NCBI RefSeq assembly: GCF_001194135.2
Contig: NC_068990.1
Coordinates: forward strand, 20,930,375-20,969,034
Origin: Octopus bimaculoides
Lineage: Eukaryota
Reading direction: 5' to 3'
Length of the DNA: 38,660 nucleotides
The position numbers were made by a program, and so were the translations under genes. Positions 2,503 to 37,978 of the stretch are shown piece by piece (the first letter of the stretch is position 1; every line of letters starts with the position of its first letter). Under the pieces are notes generated by a model, which saw only the letters and a list, made by a program, of their open reading frames with translations, had not been told where the DNA came from and searched no databases.

Positions 2503-2776
2503 TAGGCACGTTTATAGCTATGTGGTAAGAAATTTGCTTTAGAACCACATGGTTCCGGGTTCGGTTTCACGGCGTGGCAACTTGAATATGTGCTCTAATA
2601 TAGCCCAGTGTCGACCAAAGCCTTGTGAGTGGATTTGGTAGGTGGAAACTGAAAGAAGCTCGTCGTATAAATTCATTCATACATACATAAATAGATACGT
2701 AGATACATATGTGTGTGCAAGTGTGCGTGTGCGTGTGCTGTGTGTTTGTGTAGTTATAATTTGTGCTTGTGTAGTT

Positions 2777-4310: not shown

Positions 4311-4361
4311 CATTTACATTATTTACATTATTTACATTTGACGGATATTTATCCTCATCTT
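4311..4361 (-). mobile_element. Terminal fragment of a second copy of the hammerhead-tailed element, cut by an N gap
   Basis: (ATTTACATT)n followed by TGACGGATATTTATCCTCATCTT matches the outer end of the 8616-8775 arm. Confidence 0.75.
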
Positions 4362-4461
4362 NNNNNNNNNNNNNNNNNNNNNNNNNNNNNNNNNNNNNNN
4401 NNNNNNNNNNNNNNNNNNNNNNNNNNNNNNNNNNNNNNNNNNNNNNNNNNNNNNNNNNNNN

Positions 4462-4572
4462 TTTCTGTCTACCAAATCCACTCACATAGATTTGGTCAGC
4501 CCGAGGATATAGTAGAAGACACTTGCCCATGGTGCCACGCAGTGGAACTGAACCCAGGACCAAGCGGTTGCA
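4462..4572 (-). mobile_element. SINE family B 5' module fragment
   Basis: CTACCAAATCCACTCAC...GTAGAAGACACTTGCCC. Confidence 0.85.
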
Positions 4573-8381: not shown

Positions 8382-8467
8382 TTACGTTTGAGGAAATGCT
8401 CCAATTACCACCGGCATCACCATTACGTTTGAGGAAATGCTCCAATTACCACCGGTATTACCATTAC
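8382..8467. repeat. 41-bp tandem duplication (2 copies + 4 bp)
   Basis: TTACGTTTGAGGAAATGCTCCAATTACCACCGG(C/T)AT(C/T)ACCA at 8382-8422 and 8423-8463, 2 differences. Confidence 0.95.
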
Positions 8468-8589: not shown

Positions 8590-8672
8590 CTATATTTAAG
8601 AGACGAGGAATTTTGTACATTATTTACATTATTTACAATTGACGGATATTTGTTCTTATCTTGTTTGTTGCT

Positions 8673-8718
8673 AACACAACGTTTCGGCTGATATACCCTC
8701 CAGCCTTCATCAGGTGTC
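8673..8718 (-). ncRNA. Minimal type I hammerhead ribozyme, mirror copy in left arm
   Basis: Exact reverse complement of 8953-8998. Confidence 0.75.
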
Positions 8719-8791
8719 TTGGGGAAATTTCGAACCTAGGTTCTCATTCCTAAGGTATTTTTCGATGTTGTTATTTCCGCCATATGCCCAT

Positions 8792-8863
8792 GGTCATATG
8801 GCGTAGTGGTTAACAGCACGGGCTACTAATCCAAGATTCCGAGTTCGATTCCAGGCAGTGATC
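8792..8863 (+). promoter_or_regulatory. tRNA(Arg)-like SINE head with intact Pol III internal promoter
   Basis: A box TGGCGTAGTGG (8799-8809) and B box GTTCGATTCC (8843-8852) fit consensus. The sequence resembles eukaryotic tRNA-Arg(ACG) as I recall it. Acceptor stem keeps 6/7 pairs; D, anticodon and T stems are broken. Confidence 0.8.
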
Positions 8864-8952
8864 TGAATGATAATAATAATAATAATAATAATAATAATAG
8901 CAACATCGAAAAATACCTTAGGAATGAGAACCCAGGTTCGAAATTTCCCCAA

Positions 8953-8998
8953 GACACCTGATGAAGGCTGGAGGGTATATCAGCCGAAACGTTGTGTT
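8953..8998 (+). ncRNA. Minimal type I hammerhead ribozyme (dimer-type stem III)
   Basis: Stem I GACAC/GTGTT; core CTGATGA plus an extra A; stem II GGCTG/CAGCC; GAAA; loopless palindromic stem III (AACGTT 8988-8993); predicted cleavage after GTT at 8993. Confidence 0.75.
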
Positions 8999-9031
8999 AA
9001 CAACAAACAAGATGAGGACAAATATCCGTAA

Positions 9032-9048
9032 TTTTTTTTTTTTTTTTT
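9032..9048 (+). terminator. T17 run, potential Pol III terminator for the 8792 head
   Basis: First run of 4 or more T downstream of the A/B boxes. It may be an unrelated poly(A) tail from the other strand. Confidence 0.4.
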
Positions 9049-9120
9049 GATTTACCATCCATATTTATACAATTAGCCGTCATCTTTGACGGCACGGGGC
9101 CAGCTAGTTATATTATATCC

Positions 9121-9292
9121 TTTTCTACTCTAGGGACATGGCCCGAAATTTTTGGGGAGGGGGCAAGTCGATTAGATCAACTCCAGTACGCAACTGTTCT
9201 TACTTTATCGATCTTGAAATTTGAACTCAGACAGACGAAATACCGCTAAGCATTTATCCCCGGCGTGCAAACGTTTCTGCTAGAGCGCCGCG
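9121..9292 (-). mobile_element. SINE family A, tail type 2, internally deleted
   Basis: Same head as family A. Tail GGCCCGAAATTTTTGGGGAGGGG is shared with 16971 and 37763. Confidence 0.8.
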
Positions 9293-9710
9293 TTGCTAGT
9301 TATATTTTGTTAAGGCAGAATAGTCATTACACCAGTCAAAGTACATAGTGGCATTTCTTCCGGTTTTAATATTCCGGTTTCAAATACCGCTAAAGTTAAC
9401 TTTACATTTTATCCTGTCGGGCGTCGATGAAGTAGATACCATTTTTCCTGCTTCTCAAAATTTCAGGCTCTGTGCCAATACAAAAAAGGATTATATTATA
9501 ATTATACATAGAAAGACGTTTAATTTGCGAACGCTAGTGTAACTCATTATGGCACACACGCACATGTATACACATATCCACGTAGCTTTGGATTAAATTT
9601 AAGTAGCATAAATTAGGGGTCAAATCTATCAAAGAGGTATTCTTGTATTTCAAAGAATCCTCATTAGTAAATGCTATGGCGAATGTTACTCTAATGTCAA
9701 GTCACTTCAG

Positions 9711-11164: not shown

Positions 11165-11560
11165 TTTTTTCCTTTGCTTGCTTCAATCATAAAATTGTGG
11201 CGAGGCTGGGGCACCACCTTGAAGAACTTTTAGTCCAATGAATCGACTCCAGATGTTATTTTATTTTTTGTTAAGCCTGGAACTTAATTCTATCAGATTC
11301 TTTTGCACAACCTTTAAGTGACCAGGACGTAAACATACCAACACTAGTTGTCAACTGGAGGTGGTGGGGGACCAAATACGGACACAGCGTTACACATACA
11401 TATATATACATAAATAGGCGACCGGCTTCTTCTAGTTTCCGTCTATCAAATCCAATCATAAGGCGGTTTTGATCGGCCCGGTGTTATAGCATAAGACACA
11501 TGCCGAAGGTGCTACGCAGTGGGACTGAATCTGGAATCATGCTGTTGGGAAGCAAGCTTC
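11165..11560 (-). mobile_element. SINE family B, diverged
   Basis: Homologous to 18654-19045; abuts a family A copy at 11561. Confidence 0.8.
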
Positions 11561-11757
11561 TTATTTATTTATTGCCCATAAGGAGCTAAACATAGAGGGG
11601 ATAAACAAGGACAGACAAAAGTATTAAGTTGATTACATCGACCCCAATGCGTAACTGGTACTTATTTAATCGACCTGAAAAGGATGAAAGGCTAAATCGA
11701 CCTCGGCGGAATTTGAACTCAGAACGTAACGGCAGACAAAATACCGCTAAGCATTTC
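11561..11757 (-). mobile_element. SINE family A, tail type 1, cut by gap
   Basis: Homologous to 20901-21130. Confidence 0.9.
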
Positions 11758-16572: not shown

Positions 16573-16771
16573 ACGACATCATCACCCTATGGCCGCCTGC
16601 TTTCATGGTCAATGCTGAACACTCTAGTAGCATCCTCATCCCGTTCCTGTTGTCGCCTCTTTTTCTTTCGCCACTCGATGACCGAAAACGTTTGCTGGTG
16701 TTGATCCTGATGTCTTGGTTTATTTTCTGGTCAATCTGCACAATGAATATAATTAGAGCGGATATGAAGTC

Positions 16772-16950
16772 GGCGTGCTGGCAGAATCGTTACCAGGGCA
16801 AAATGCTTAGCATTATTTCGTCTTCATGTTCTGAGTTCAAATTCCACTGAGGTCGACTTTGCTTTTCATCCTTTCGGGATCGATAAAATAAGTACCGGTG
16901 TAACACTTGAGTCGCTGTAATACACTAGATACCAAAATTTCAGGCCCTCT
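16772..16950 (+). mobile_element. SINE family A, diverged
   Basis: GAGTTCAAATTCCACTGAGGTCGACTTTGCTTTTCATCCTTTCGGG core. Confidence 0.8.
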
Positions 16951-16970: not shown

Positions 16971-17182
16971 TTCTTTTCTACACTAGGCACAAGGCCCGAA
17001 ATATGAGAGGGGGCCAGTCGATTAGATAGATCACAGTACGCAACTGCTACTTAATTTATCGACCCCGAAAGGATGAAAGGCAAAGTTGACCTCGGCGGAA
17101 TTTGAACTCAGAACATAAAGACTGACGAAATACCGCTACGCATTTCGCCTGGCGTGCTAGCGTTCCTGCCAGCTCACCGCCT
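16971..17182 (-). mobile_element. SINE family A, tail type 2, near full length
   Basis: Head, core and tail all present. Confidence 0.9.
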
Positions 17183-17251
17183 TAGTAGAAAGAAGTTTTA
17201 TTGCGAGCATGGTTTGTGCAGGGCCAGTGCACACTGATGTAAGACCTGAAT

Positions 17252-17368
17252 GGAGGCTTTAGTGTGCCCAAGGCTATACTAGAAAACACTTAGCCAAGTT
17301 GCCACGCTGAAACCGGAACCATGTGGTTAGAAGCAAGCTTATTATTTATACAGTGACGCCTGTGCCTA
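17252..17368 (-). mobile_element. SINE family B head fragment
   Basis: CCGGAACCATGTGGTTAGAAGCAAGCTT. Confidence 0.7.
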
Positions 17369-18653: not shown

Positions 18654-19045
18654 GCTTTACTCTTTTACTCGTTCCAGTCATTTGACTGCGGCCATGATGG
18701 AGCACCGCCTTTAGTCGAGAAGATCGACCCCAGGACTTATTCTTTGGAAGCCTAGTACTTATTCTATAGGTCTCTTTTGCCGTACGGCTAAGTTACGGGG
18801 ACGTAAACACACTAGTATCGGCTGTGAAGCGACGTTGGGGGACAAGCACAGATACAAGCATATACACACACATAAATATATAAATACATATATACGACGG
18901 GCTTCTTTTAGTTTCCGTCTACCAAATCCACTCACAAGGCTTTGGTCGGCCCGAGGCTATAGTAGAAGACACTTGCCAAAGGTGCCACGCAGTGGGAATG
19001 AACCCGGAACCATGTGGTTGGTAAGCAAGTTACTTACCACAGCCA
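18654..19045 (-). mobile_element. SINE family B, near full length, low divergence
   Basis: All modules of family B are present. Confidence 0.9.
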
Positions 19046-19664
19046 GAAAAAACTAATCGATCTCGGTATGACTTGAACTCAGAATTTGAAGGTACCAAAT
19101 TACAGACAGGAAAATATTTTGTACAGCGCACCATCAATTCTGCCAACAACCACATTTTTTCTAATATAATGAACACCATTTTTAAGCTATAAAACAAAAT
19201 GAAATGTAAATGGTTATTCATTAATTTATACAATAACTTCAAATCCTCAATGTATTTTTCATAAATACGGTATTGCAAGGCAATTAATGCTGAATGTGAT
19301 TTTTACTGTTTAGAATAAAATTAATAAGCGTAAAGTAGAATTAAATAATTTCAATTTAAAAGTTGTTTACAGTCTGTTTGAAAGGAAATTAAGGAAATTC
19401 CGAAACATAATGGTGAAATTTTCTTTATAAATTAAGAAATTTCGTTTGTGACATGCTACCTACTTTTGTAAAGTGTTTTCATTCCCCAACAAGTAAAATT
19501 CCGACGTAAGTAAACAGAGTTGAATGTTTTCTAAACGAATTTTTATGTTTTCTTCCAATTCTACTTACTTTCAACTAAACGAATATTGATCGTAAAAATA
19601 TTTCTTATTTTCCTTCGTGCTTTCATTAATTTCATTTTCCTCCATTTTAATTTCTTGTTTTAGC

Positions 19665-20872: not shown

Positions 20873-20900
20873 GTTAAAGATCGATAATAATGTTTATTTC

Positions 20901-33129: not shown

Positions 33130-33950
33130 TTTCATCAAAAGTGCCTCAGACGTATCTTGAGAATGAAATGGGAATGTTTCATATCAGATACAGACGTTCA
33201 CGCAGGGCACGTCGCAGCTCAGTTGAACAACATGTTATCTTGGCTGAAATCAGATGGCCTGGACCTGTTGTCAGAATGAAAGATGAGCGATCGCCAAAGC
33301 GTCTAATCTATGGTGAGCTGAACTCTGACAAGTGACCACAACATAAGCAGAAGAAAAGGTATAAACACTGTGTGAAGGAAAACCTCAGGAAACTAGATAT
33401 GAACAGAAGTGATTGGGAAACTGATGTTCTAGTTCAGGACAAGTGGAGAGGTTCTGTTAGGACAGGTTGCAATACCTGGAAGGAGAAGATGGTTCAGTGT
33501 TCTGAGCTTAAAAGGTCCTTTTGGAAAGGAACTATTGGGACTGAAATCAACAGTGAATACTGGATTTTATGTGTGATCGTGTTCTGTTGTAAAAAGTAGG
33601 GTACGTGAATCATATGACATCACATGAAAATCGAAATACCCAGGTAGGTAATAACCTCGAATACCAACCGCTTCTTACGACTTGTTCGCAAAACTTGTAA
33701 AACAATACCGAGACTTAAAACACGTATGTTAGTTCCCAAAACATTCCTTCAGAATCGGATTCCAAAGGGTAATGATGTAGAAGAGACTTGAATAATATCT
33801 GTCACTAATGTTTTAAACCCTGTCAGTCAGAAGCTAGTCTTAAAAGTCATCTGAGGCTCCTCAACGGAGTGATTGTGCTGTGTGATGGAGTGTGGTTTAT
33901 ATGTTCGTGGGACAGCTGTCATCTGACAATATGAAGCAATCATCACTTAT
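33130..33950 (+). mobile_element. 5'-truncated RTE-clade (BovB-like) LINE, decayed
   Basis: FHQKCLRRILRMKW, then EIRWPGPVVRMKDERSPKRLIYGELNSDK*PQHKQKKRYKHCVKENLRKLDMNRSDWETDVLVQDKWRGSVRTG, then C2H2-like relics, a 3' UTR and a (TATG)n tail. Confidence 0.9.
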
Positions 33951-34007
33951 GTATGATAGTATGTATGTATTATGTATATATGTATGTATGTGTGTATGTA
34001 TGTATGT

Positions 34008-34175
34008 AAGGAAGGAAGGTAACCATCGGTTTCAACAGATCACATGTTTGCACGTGAAAAATTTGTGACAGTCGCTGAAGGGGGTGGGGCAGCATTCGGT
34101 CTTTTTGCAGAAAGCCCCACACGTGAATGCAGTCACACACACAGCAACTGCATTTGAAGAAGCCCTCAACCGGTG
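34008..34175 (-). mobile_element. 3' end of a second RTE-type LINE, tail-to-tail with the first
   Basis: Minus strand FKCSCCVCDC, then with a 1-nt shift SRVGLS, resembling the RTE terminal finger C..C.RDCHSRIGL.SH. Followed by a short UTR ending in (CCTT)n(CATA)n. Confidence 0.55.
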
Positions 34176-35165: not shown

Positions 35166-35550
35166 GGGAAAAAGTTTGCTCAAGACCACATGGTTCCAGG
35201 CACGGTTCCACTGTATGGCATCCTGGGAAAGTGTCTTCTACTATATCCCTGGGATGACCAAAGCCTTGAGAGTGAATTTGGTGCATGGAAACTGAAAGAA
35301 GCCCCTCGTGTATATATGTGAATATTTATGTGTGTCTTTGTGATATCCCCACCCTACCTACAAAATAAAAAAAGAAAACAATCGACAACAAATATTGGAT
35401 TGTTTATGTCCGAGTAATATAGCAGATCGACAAAAAGTAATTGATATAATAAATACCAGGCCTTCAAGAAATAAGTACTGTGGTTCTTTCAACTAATGTC
35501 TTCCGACGTTACCCCATCATGGCTGTAGTTCGATAACTTAAACAAGCAAA
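35166..35550 (+). mobile_element. SINE family B, diverged
   Basis: CCACATGGTTCC...GTGTCTTCTACTATA...GGAAACTGAAAGAAGCCC. Confidence 0.75.
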
Positions 35551-37762: not shown

Positions 37763-37978
37763 TTCCTTTCTCCTCTAGGCACAAGTCCCGAAATTATTTT
37801 GGAGGGTGCCAGTCGATTAGATCGAACCCAGTACGCAACTGGTACGTAATTTATTGACCCCAAATGGATGAAAAGCAAAGTCGACCTCGGTGGAATTTGG
37901 ACTCAGAACGTAAAGACAGACGACATACCGCTATGCACTTCGCCAGGCGTGCTAACGTTTCTCCTAGCTCGCCGCCTT
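37763..37978 (-). mobile_element. SINE family A, tail type 2, near full length
   Basis: Homologous to 16971-17182. Confidence 0.9.

What the first reader, a model, noticed from the sequence alone, without database searches (positions are those of the whole stretch)
8616..9048. Candidate ribozyme-tailed tRNA SINE that may parasitise Penelope-like elements
Seen: one unit joins a tRNA(Arg)-like head with intact A and B boxes, an (AAT)n spacer and a 130-bp tail containing a hammerhead fold; on the left arm the tail ends in (AATGTAAAT)n. The unit occurs as an inverted dimer. Known: minimal hammerheads and inverted or partial-tandem terminal repeats are hallmarks of Penelope-like elements (PLEs); typical SINEs borrow LINE 3' tails; Schistosoma Sm-alpha repeats are a precedent for a Pol III repeat with a hammerhead. 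Inference: this is a high-copy non-autonomous element made by Pol III, processed by its own ribozyme and copied by a PLE reverse transcriptase. I do not know of a description of this combination in cephalopods, but cannot check.
Basis: partly seen in the sequence, partly recalled or inferred. Interest (0 to 1): 0.9.

Follow-up and report, generated by a model that had tools for sequence, protein, structure and literature searches.

The report
tRNA-headed repeat with Penelope-type hammerhead
A short mobile-DNA insertion joins a tRNA-derived promoter head to a tail carrying the minimal self-cutting RNA motif typical of Penelope-like retrotransposons, which hints at an undescribed kind of parasitic repeat, but only one locus could be examined.

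Summary
Two 139-nt arms (8637-8775 and 8896-9034, 95% complementary) flank a tRNA-derived head (8791-8863) and an (AAT)11 run. The head has a perfect A box and a B box matching 10 of 11 positions. Each arm holds a 46-nt minimal type-I hammerhead (8953-8998 on +, 8673-8718 on -). The motif has all four traits reported for Penelope-like-element (PLE) hammerheads. It is the only such motif in the window, and 300 shuffles gave none. Rfam and ARAGORN recognise neither the ribozyme nor the tRNA.

New here: the symmetry axis lies at the 5' end of the head. The left copy keeps the first 13 nt of the head fused to the tail. So head and tail were one unit, and two units are joined head to head. A third tail end with the same (AATGTAAAT)n repeat runs into an assembly gap at 4312-4361.

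Not supported: processing by the ribozyme, because all copies span the predicted cut site. Untestable here: copy number, genome-wide linkage of head and tail, and the partner. A LINE with a repeat tail is a serious rival to a PLE. No other copies could be retrieved from any collection. Verdict: a plausible new variant of known kinds, resting on one locus.

The parts
8616..8640 (-). 3' simple-repeat tail of the left copy, (AATGTAAAT)~2.6 read on the minus strand
   Evidence: The same repeat adjoins the third copy at 4312-4338.
8641..8775 (-). Tail module of the left (inverted) copy
   Evidence: Inverted repeat I1; 95.7% identity to the right tail; alignment.
8673..8718 (-). Minimal type-I hammerhead motif of the left copy, identical to the right one. 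Predicted cut between 8678 and 8677 on the minus strand.
   Evidence: Descriptor scan.
8776..8790 (-). 5' end of the left copy: the first 13 nt of the head (8778-8790, TGGGCATATGGCG when reverse-complemented, 12/13 match) joined through GA to AATA and the tail. About 90 nt of head body and (AAT)n are deleted.
   Evidence: Global alignment of the two halves.
8788..8793 (.). CCATGG palindrome holding the symmetry axis (8790|8791), where the two copies meet 5' end to 5' end
8791..8863 (+). tRNA(Arg)-like head of the right copy. A box 8799-8809 (11/11); B box 8842-8852 (10/11).
   Evidence: Not called as a tRNA by ARAGORN or Rfam.
8866..8899 (+). (AAT)11 spacer between head and tail
8896..9031 (+). 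Tail module of the right copy. It ends at CCGTAA, without the 9-nt repeat.
8953..8998 (+). Minimal type-I hammerhead. Helix I 8953-8957 with 8994-8998; CUGAUGA 8958-8964; extra A 8965; helix II 8966-8971 with 8980-8985; GAAA 8986-8989; C15.2 and G16.2 at 8990-8991; U16.1 8992; U17 8993. Predicted cut at 8993|8994.
   Evidence: trait list from PMC4209133.
9032..9048 (+). T17 run abutting the right copy. It would act as a Pol III terminator for a transcript started in the head. Its origin is unexplained.
4312..4361 (-). Third, partial copy: (ATTTACATT)3 plus the last 23 nt of the tail, cut off by the assembly gap 4362-4461

Best explanation
The locus is a fairly young insertion of a short non-autonomous retroelement.

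Unit layout: a tRNA(Arg)-derived head with an internal Pol III promoter, an (AAT)n linker, a tail of about 135 nt, and an (AATGTAAAT)n 3' repeat. The tail contains a minimal type-I hammerhead of the kind found in the terminal repeats of Penelope-like elements.

Arrangement: two units sit 5' end to 5' end around a CCATGG axis. The left unit has since lost, or never had, about 90 nt of head body and linker.

Proposed working, all inferred:
1. Pol III starts at the head and reads through the tail. At this copy a T17 run would stop it.
2. The uncut RNA is copied at a nicked target by a reverse transcriptase that recognises the tail.
3. That enzyme is most likely from a PLE. The tail was probably borrowed from a PLE, and PLE integration typically leaves inverted 5'-adjacent copies.
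4. The ribozyme is probably an inherited passenger, or it acts only when two copies pair. Helix III is reduced to the self-complementary ACGU.

My breakdown: head and tail are one element, about 0.65. The tail and ribozyme are PLE-derived, about 0.55. A PLE enzyme moves it, about 0.4.
For: Shown by the sequence and tools:
- The inverted repeat is real and 95% matched.
- The hammerhead descriptor hits only the two arms; 0 of 300 shuffles give a hit.
- That paper also reports pairs of such motifs 100-700 bp apart on opposite strands.
- The 46-nt motif is identical in both arms, while 6 differences lie in the other 93 nt.
- The symmetry axis lies 1 nt before the tRNA-like +1. The left copy keeps 12/13 of the head's first 13 nt fused to the tail. 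By my calculation the chance of that at a fixed position is about 1e-6.
- No target-site duplication surrounds the head alone.
- The head is unlike the roughly 19 copies of two other SINE families in the window.
- Two separate loci carry the same 9-nt repeat at the tail end. That marks a retroelement 3' end, not a terminal inverted repeat.
- The third copy sits at an assembly gap, as reported for PLE structures.

From the literature:
- Non-autonomous PLE derivatives that share 3' ends with autonomous PLEs exist.
- Animal retrozymes are argued to be PLE derivatives.
Against: - Only one complete head, and one locus with head and tail together.
- The two copies may stem from one event, so the linkage evidence is effectively n = 1.
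- No PLE coding remnant was seen in the window (motif check only).
- No partner sequence is available.
- A 9-nt repeat at the 3' end is not a described PLE hallmark. It resembles LINE tails such as UnaL2 (TGTAA)n. A LINE fragment in this window ends in (TATG)n.
- Rfam hammerhead and tRNA models do not score.
- There is no covariation, because the motif copies are identical.
- No target-site duplication beyond chance.
- The right copy lacks the repeat tail and abuts an unexplained T17.
- The tail alone is not unusually stable (z = -1.0).
Confidence: 0.5

Rival explanations
1. The same composite tRNA-headed element, but moved by a LINE of the stringent-recognition type (L2, CR1 or I-like) that recognises a 3' stem-loop plus a repeat tail. 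The hammerhead would be an unrelated acquisition, as in the Schistosoma SM-alpha SINE-like elements.
For: - The unit ends in a short tandem repeat that contains TGTAA, and the linker is (TAA)n. UnaL2 ends in (TGTAA)n and the I element in (TAA)n (PMC3747384).
- A stem-loop GUUGU-GUUA-ACAAC lies about 35 nt before the repeat.
- A LINE 3' fragment in the window ends in (TATG)n.
- LINEs and SINEs with hammerhead or HDV-like ribozymes are reported (PMC6765202).
Against: - The ribozyme has the specific PLE-type minimal architecture.
- A head-to-head inverted pair is typical of PLE insertions, not LINE insertions.
- No target-site duplication was found, whereas a neighbouring SINE copy shows one of about 18 nt.
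- No LINE in the window shares the tail.
Confidence: 0.2
2. Two inverted, truncated fragments of a PLE end (a remnant of a PLE insertion), with an unrelated small tRNA-SINE ending in (AAT)n that landed between them by chance.
For: - Pairs of minimal hammerheads on opposite strands 100-700 bp apart are described as truncated PLE remnants.
- The window is dense in SINEs, about 19 copies in 31.6 kb of sequence.
- (TAA)n is a known retroelement tail.
- There is only one head in the window.
Against: - The left arm carries the head's first 13 nt (12/13) fused to the tail, and the symmetry axis is at the head's 5' end.
- No duplication flanks the head.
- Head plus (AAT)n is only 109 bp.
- The head belongs to neither abundant family.
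Confidence: 0.12
3. A non-LTR retrozyme: a ribozyme-bearing repeat that is cut out of tandem transcripts, circularised and reverse transcribed.
For: It has a type-I hammerhead, is non-coding and is PLE-related. Such elements occur in molluscs (mussel; PMC7229834) and are argued to derive from PLE terminal repeats.
Against: - There is no direct tandem repeat here. The two ribozymes are on opposite strands, so no monomer can be released from one transcript.
- The copies are not circularly permuted.
- The motif is the minimal type, not the canonical type I with loop contacts.
- A tRNA head is not a retrozyme feature.
Confidence: 0.05
4. A foldback or miniature inverted-repeat DNA transposon whose arm happens to contain a hammerhead-like string.
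For: A long, near-perfect inverted repeat of small size. There are sub-threshold hits to a hairpin microRNA family (MIR2606: 57.8 bits against a threshold of 139.7).
Against: - No target-site duplication.
- The arm ends carry a 9-nt tandem repeat at two loci, but not on the right arm.
- The motif appears in 0 of 300 shuffles.
- The centre is a tRNA-derived sequence whose 5' end is the axis.
Confidence: 0.04
5. An assembly artefact: a false palindrome in a gap-ridden draft.
For: There are 13 gaps in the window, and one cuts the third copy.
Against: - The arms differ at 6 positions, and by a 90-nt deletion and different ends. Artefactual palindromes are expected to be identical.
- There is an independent third copy.
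Confidence: 0.03

Closest known systems
Minimal hammerheads in the terminal repeats of metazoan Penelope-like elements (Cervera & de la Pena 2014, PMC4209133)
   Same: - CUGAUGA and GAAA boxes.
[quoted passage not shown]
- A G10.1-C11.1 pair and a 6-bp helix II.
- A 5-bp helix I.
- No helix III, only the self-complementary ACGU.
- Occurrence as a pair on opposite strands a few hundred bp apart.
   Different: No PLE reading frame is nearby, and the motif sits behind a tRNA-derived head and in front of a 9-nt repeat tail. Cleavage is untested.
Schistosoma SM-alpha / Sj-alpha SINE-like elements (described in PMC6765202 and PMC8490949)
   Same: A short non-coding repeat that combines a Pol III promoter with a type-I hammerhead.
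   Different: - SM-alpha has a canonical, active hammerhead and occurs in tandem arrays, where cleavage releases monomers.
- Here the motif is minimal, the arrangement is inverted, and the copies span the cut site.
- There is no sequence relation that I could test.
Non-LTR retrozymes of animals (PMC7229834; bioRxiv 10.64898/2026.07.22.740005)
   Same: Non-autonomous, hammerhead-bearing, and thought to depend on PLEs.
   Different: Retrozymes are defined by direct tandem repeats and circular RNA. Neither is seen here, and they have no tRNA head.
Non-autonomous PLE derivatives such as MRC1 of Chlamydomonas (Craig et al. 2021, PMC8557442)
   Same: Short elements thought to use PLE machinery through a shared 3' end.
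   Different: They are found in algae, lack a hammerhead and a tRNA head, and form direct pseudo-LTRs.
tRNA-derived SINEs with LINE tails (SINE2 class), including octopus families of Ohshima & Okada 1994 as cited in PMC4758252
   Same: A tRNA-derived head with A and B boxes, a short body and a simple-repeat 3' end.
   Different: Known SINE tails come from LINEs, and Repbase defines SINEs as LINE-dependent (PMC5753468). A PLE-type ribozyme tail and a head-to-head arrangement are not described.

Membership tests
Hammerhead ribozyme, PLE-type minimal type I | Conserved core boxes CUGANGA and GAAA in the right order | tested here: met
   CUGAUGA 8958-8964 and GAAA 8986-8989
Hammerhead ribozyme, PLE-type minimal type I | [quoted passage not shown] | tested here: met
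   A8965 is unpaired. GGCUGG pairs with UCAGCC (6 bp, one G-U), with an 8-nt loop. Trait list.
Hammerhead ribozyme, PLE-type minimal type I | Palindromic 15.2-16.2, followed by U16.1 and H17 | tested here: met
   A-C-G-U at 8989-8992, then U17 at 8993
Hammerhead ribozyme, PLE-type minimal type I | Helix I of 4-5 bp starting right after the cut site | tested here: met
   GACAC pairs with GUGUU, 5 bp with one G-U. It is present in the local minimum-energy fold.
Hammerhead ribozyme, PLE-type minimal type I | Match to curated covariance models (Rfam hammerhead families) | tested here: not met
   No hit at gathering score or at E<=10, even on a 71-nt slice. This is expected if these models require helix III, which I did not check.
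Hammerhead ribozyme, PLE-type minimal type I | Compensatory changes in the helices across copies | tested here: inconclusive
   The two motif copies are identical, and the third copy lacks the region.
Hammerhead ribozyme, PLE-type minimal type I | Self-cleavage | not testable with these tools
   Needs transcription of single and paired constructs.
tRNA-derived SINE | Head derived from a tRNA, with A and B boxes | tested here: met
   A box 11/11, B box 10/11. Alignment score 47 against shuffles at 14.8 +/- 2.9. The reference tRNAs were recalled from memory.
tRNA-derived SINE | Cloverleaf still recognisable | tested here: not met
   ARAGORN and the Rfam tRNA model are negative. This is not required of SINE heads.
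tRNA-derived SINE | Many dispersed copies with the same head-body-tail order | tested here: inconclusive
   One full unit, one deleted unit and one tail end in the window. External searches found nothing.
tRNA-derived SINE | Target-site duplication | tested here: not met
   The best flank repeat is 10 nt with 1 mismatch. That length or more occurred in 93 of 300 random pairs.
tRNA-derived SINE | Tail shared with an autonomous partner | not testable with these tools
   No eukaryotic genome or repeat library is on hand. The LINE fragment in the window does not share the tail.
PLE-dependent non-autonomous element | Tandem or inverted 5'-adjacent copies at the insertion | tested here: met
   A head-to-head pair. 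The feature is described.
PLE-dependent non-autonomous element | 3' end similar to that of an autonomous PLE (reverse transcriptase plus GIY-YIG nuclease) in the same genome | not testable with these tools
   No PLE motifs were seen in the window's reading frames (motif check only). The genome is not available.
Non-LTR retrozyme | Direct tandem repeats, each with a hammerhead | tested here: not met
   No direct repeat of the unit. The motifs are on opposite strands.
Foldback / miniature inverted-repeat DNA transposon | Terminal inverted repeats flanked by a target-site duplication | tested here: not met
   No duplication, and the ends are asymmetric: a 9-nt repeat on the left and T17 on the right.

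The most novel reading that the evidence does not exclude
This is one copy of a family of true SINEs that parasitise Penelope-like elements rather than LINEs. The tRNA-derived Pol III head would be fused to the ribozyme-bearing 3' end of a PLE, and integration would follow the PLE habit of inverted or tandem copies. That would be the first SINE class with a PLE partner. It would also give a natural Pol III-driven substrate for studying how PLE enzymes choose and copy RNA, and what the minimal hammerhead is for.
Probability: 0.35. Interest if true: 0.75.

Novelty: new variant of a known kind. Interest (0 to 1): 0.55.

Why it matters
SINEs are defined as clients of LINEs. PLEs are a separate, telomerase-related retroelement order whose known dependants are retrozymes and a few algal elements.

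A tRNA-headed SINE with a PLE-type ribozyme tail would add a third kind of dependant. It would show that PLE machinery can be hijacked by Pol III transcripts.

It would also be a small, tractable system for two open questions: how PLE integration makes inverted and tandem copies, and whether the minimal hammerhead has any role. The copies here argue that the transposing RNA was not cut, which bears on that second question.

If the partner turns out to be a LINE, the element is still a second example, after the Schistosoma SM-alpha family, of a Pol III repeat that carries a hammerhead.

Tried and rejected
Attempts to find other copies outside the window all failed:
- Exact-pattern DNA scans with the ribozyme core and with the head found nothing in metagenome contigs, viral contigs or prokaryotic genomes.
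- I searched the protein collection with reading frames of the repeat, hoping that spurious gene calls on other copies would lead to their contigs. The sense frame gave no candidates. All six frames joined, with low-complexity runs masked, gave nothing at E<=0.01.
- A nearby LINE fragment, tried to identify the organism and fetch genome pieces, gave nothing at E<=0.001.
- So the collections apparently hold no sequence of this genome, and all three protein searches are spent.

Curated models:
- Rfam found no hammerhead and no tRNA at any threshold or slice size.
- The sub-threshold MIR2606 hits only reflect the long hairpin, and I rejected them.
- Pfam on the repeat frame and the LINE fragment gave nothing useful.

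Other checks:
- Target-site duplication search: nothing beyond chance.
- Similarity of the right flank to the element ends: weak (scores 17-18) and not pursued.
- A simple motif check of the window's reading frames showed no convincing reverse-transcriptase or GIY-YIG remnant. A full profile scan of the window was not run.
- Two papers that would give more detail (Lunse et al. 2017; Ferbeyre et al. 1998) are not held.
- The Octopus vulgaris repeat paper has no sequence library among its held supplements.

Full report
**What is in the sequence**

Between 8616 and 9048 lie two 139-nt arms (8637-8775 and 8896-9034). They are 95% complementary and 120 nt apart (95.7% by BLAST). As a single strand the stretch would form an almost perfect hairpin of -265.8 kcal/mol, z = -31.6.

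Between the arms lie a tRNA-like sequence and an (AAT)11 run at 8866-8899. Outside the left arm are 2.6 units of ATTTACATT, which is (AATGTAAAT)n on the other strand. The right arm stops at CCGTAA and abuts 17 T (9032-9048).

BLAST of the parts against the window finds one more piece. At 4312-4361 there are three units of the same 9-nt repeat and the last 23 nt of the tail, cut off by the assembly gap at 4362-4461. The head has no other copy in the window.

**The ribozyme motif**

Rfam finds no hammerhead at its curated thresholds, at E<=10 on the region, at E<=5 on the whole window, or at E<=10 on a 71-nt slice.

Read by hand, the right arm contains GACAC-CUGAUGA-A-GGCUGG-AGGGUAUA-UCAGCC-GAAA-CG-U-U|GUGUU at 8953-8998.

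Cervera and de la Pena (PMC4209133) defined a minimal hammerhead in the terminal repeats of metazoan Penelope-like elements (PLEs). They list traits that emerged beyond their search pattern:
- a conserved G10.1-C11.1 pair;
- palindromic positions 15.2-16.2 with little or no helix III;
- a helix I of 4-5 bp and a longer helix II.

All of these are present here.

I wrote a descriptor with these rules and scanned both strands. It hits the two arms and nothing else, and it gave no hit in 300 dinucleotide-preserving shuffles of the window. Helices I and II are part of the local minimum-energy fold: -13.0 kcal/mol for the hand-drawn fold against -13.6 for the optimum.

The 46-nt motif is identical in the two arms, while the other 93 nt carry six differences. 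That is suggestive, not significant (about 0.09 by my calculation). With identical copies there is no covariation test. So the motif is real at the level of sequence and fold. Activity is untested. The same paper reports that such motifs barely cleave in vitro and only as dimers.

**The head**

ARAGORN and the Rfam tRNA model do not call it. It nevertheless aligns to tRNA-Arg(ACG), recalled from memory, with a score of 47 against 14.8 +/- 2.9 for shuffled heads. That is the best of twelve recalled tRNAs, with Thr next at 42.

The A box TGGCGTAGTGG (8799-8809) is perfect. The B box AGTTCGATTCC (8842-8852) misses one position. This is what a decayed SINE head looks like. 'Intact A and B boxes' is nearly right.

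**Are head and tail one element?**

No collection on hand holds this genome. The locus itself gives an argument.

A global alignment of the right half against the reverse complement of the left half shows that the symmetry does not stop at the tails. The axis lies at 8790|8791, inside a CCATGG palindrome and one base before the tRNA-like +1. The left copy begins with TGGGCATATGGCG, which matches 12 of 13 positions of the head's first 13 nt. It then continues with GA-AATA and the tail.

So the left copy is the same unit minus about 90 nt (head body and most of the (AAT) run). Both copies start at the same 5' end, where a Pol III transcript of a tRNA-type gene would be expected to start (general knowledge of Pol III genes, not tested here).

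A chance 12/13 match at a fixed position has a probability near 1e-6 (my calculation). An unrelated SINE that landed between two older arms would not leave its own first 13 nt on the far side, and no duplication flanks the head.

The window is rich in SINEs, with about ten copies of one family and nine of another. The head belongs to neither.

I therefore think head, linker and tail were one RNA (about 0.65). The caveat is that the two copies may come from a single event, so this is one observation and not a family consensus.

**What kind of element**

The same 9-nt repeat adjoins the tail end at two separate loci. That marks it as the 3' end of a retroelement rather than the tip of a DNA transposon. 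There is no target-site duplication beyond chance: the best is 10 nt with one mismatch, and that length or more occurred in 93 of 300 random flank pairs. The arms differ at 6 positions, by a 90-nt deletion and in their outer ends, which argues against an assembly palindrome.

**Which partner**

For a PLE:
- the ribozyme architecture;
- the pair on opposite strands, which Cervera and de la Pena describe at 100-700 bp spacing;
- the habit of PLE insertions to carry an inverted copy at the 5' end, odd extensions at one end, unclear duplications and assembly breaks (Craig et al.);
- the existence of non-autonomous PLE derivatives that share 3' ends with autonomous elements, and of retrozymes now argued to derive from PLE terminal repeats;
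- octopus genomes are reported to hold both very many SINE families and recently active PLEs (PMC13282606), but I could not verify that this window is cephalopod.

Against a PLE, and for a LINE:
- a short tandem repeat at the 3' end is the signature of stringent-type LINE/SINE pairs, for example UnaL2 with (TGTAA)n and the I element with (TAA)n (PMC3747384);
- the tail repeat contains TGTAA and the linker is (TAA)n;
- a LINE 3' fragment in this window ends in (TATG)n;
- a simple motif check of the window's reading frames found no convincing reverse-transcriptase or GIY-YIG remnant.

I put the PLE partner at about 0.4 and a LINE partner at about 0.2.

The inferred cycle is as follows. Pol III starts at the head and reads through the linker and tail. 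At this copy the T17 run would terminate it. The RNA is then copied at a nicked target by the partner's reverse transcriptase.

The head-to-head junction at a self-complementary CCATGG would fit two cDNAs meeting at their 3' ends, or a snap-back at the RNA 5' end. That is speculation.

What the sequence does show is that every copy, three of three, contains sequence on both sides of the predicted cut. So the template RNA was uncut. A cut at 8993 would sever the head and most of the tail from the last 40 nt and the repeat, which is the part a reverse transcriptase would have to engage.

In this locus the two motifs are on opposite strands, so one transcript holds only one of them. A read-through transcript would be locked in a 139-bp duplex.

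The ribozyme is therefore more likely a passenger inherited with the tail, or active only between molecules, than a processing step of the element's own cycle. 'Processed by its own ribozyme' is not supported.

**Comparison with known systems**

- The motif is a member, by sequence criteria, of the PLE-type minimal hammerheads.
- The element is not a retrozyme, because it has no direct tandem repeats.
- It is not like SM-alpha in detail. SM-alpha has a canonical, active ribozyme in tandem arrays.
- It is not a standard SINE as catalogued, because those are tied to LINEs.
- I found no paper describing a tRNA-headed repeat with a PLE-type ribozyme tail. Repbase, Dfam and SINEBase were not available, so 'not catalogued' is unproven.

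**Verdict**

It is strengthened by the shared 5' end and weakened on ribozyme processing. It remains open on copy number and partner.

It is best filed as a possible new variant of known kinds. It is worth a genome-wide check that would take an hour with the assembly in hand.

Noticed in passing
window 2521-2684, 4462-4570, 11392-11563, 17254-17337, 18860-19060, 21706-21821, 23495-23641, 31506-31673, 35185-35335: About ten copies (67-87% identical) of a tRNA-derived SINE-like family. One lies directly after the gap that cuts the third tail copy.
   Followed up: partly
window 9115-9307, 9314-9441, 11561-11757, 16771-16921, 17016-17202, 20880-21160, 21819-22028, 37811-37976: About nine copies of a second abundant repeat family (69-89% identical). 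The copy at 20880-21160 is flanked by an 18-nt direct repeat, GATAATAAT(G/A)TTTATT, which looks like a LINE-type target-site duplication. One copy starts about 65 bp to the right of the finding.
   Followed up: partly
window 31492-31564: The only tRNA that ARAGORN calls (Gly, TCC) scores below the Rfam tRNA threshold (24.4 against 29 bits). It runs into the body of the first SINE family, so it is probably a SINE head and not a tRNA gene.
   Followed up: partly
window 33130-34008: A frameshifted fragment that looks like the C-terminal part of a non-LTR retrotransposon protein (my own recognition; no hit in Pfam or in the protein collection). An untranslated stretch follows, ending in a (TATG)n repeat.
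   Followed up: partly
window 8936-8949: The tail itself contains a B-box-like string, GGTTCGAAATTTCC, just before the ribozyme. It may be a remnant of a second tRNA-like part, or chance.
   Followed up: no
window 9049-9095: The right flank after T17 has a degenerate ATTTAC-type stretch and a small hairpin, GCCGTCA-TCTT-TGACGGC. The hairpin arms resemble the tail's terminal CCGTCA. This could be a remnant of an older copy or a PLE-style end extension. The similarity is weak.
   Followed up: partly
window 8382-8467: A 41-nt unit repeated twice in tandem (95% identical) about 150 bp to the left of the finding, with no evident link to it.
   Followed up: no
window, whole: The window is a draft-quality stretch with 13 gaps and 34.6% G+C. 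It is rich in TA, TG and TATG microsatellites, which produce dozens of sub-threshold hits to microRNA families (mir-297, mir-466 and others) that are artefacts of simple repeats. No protein-coding exon was recognised.
   Followed up: partly
window 8637-9034: Five of the six differences between the arms are transitions. If the locus is transcribed through, it would form a 139-bp RNA duplex, a natural substrate for RNA editing or small-RNA pathways.
   Followed up: no
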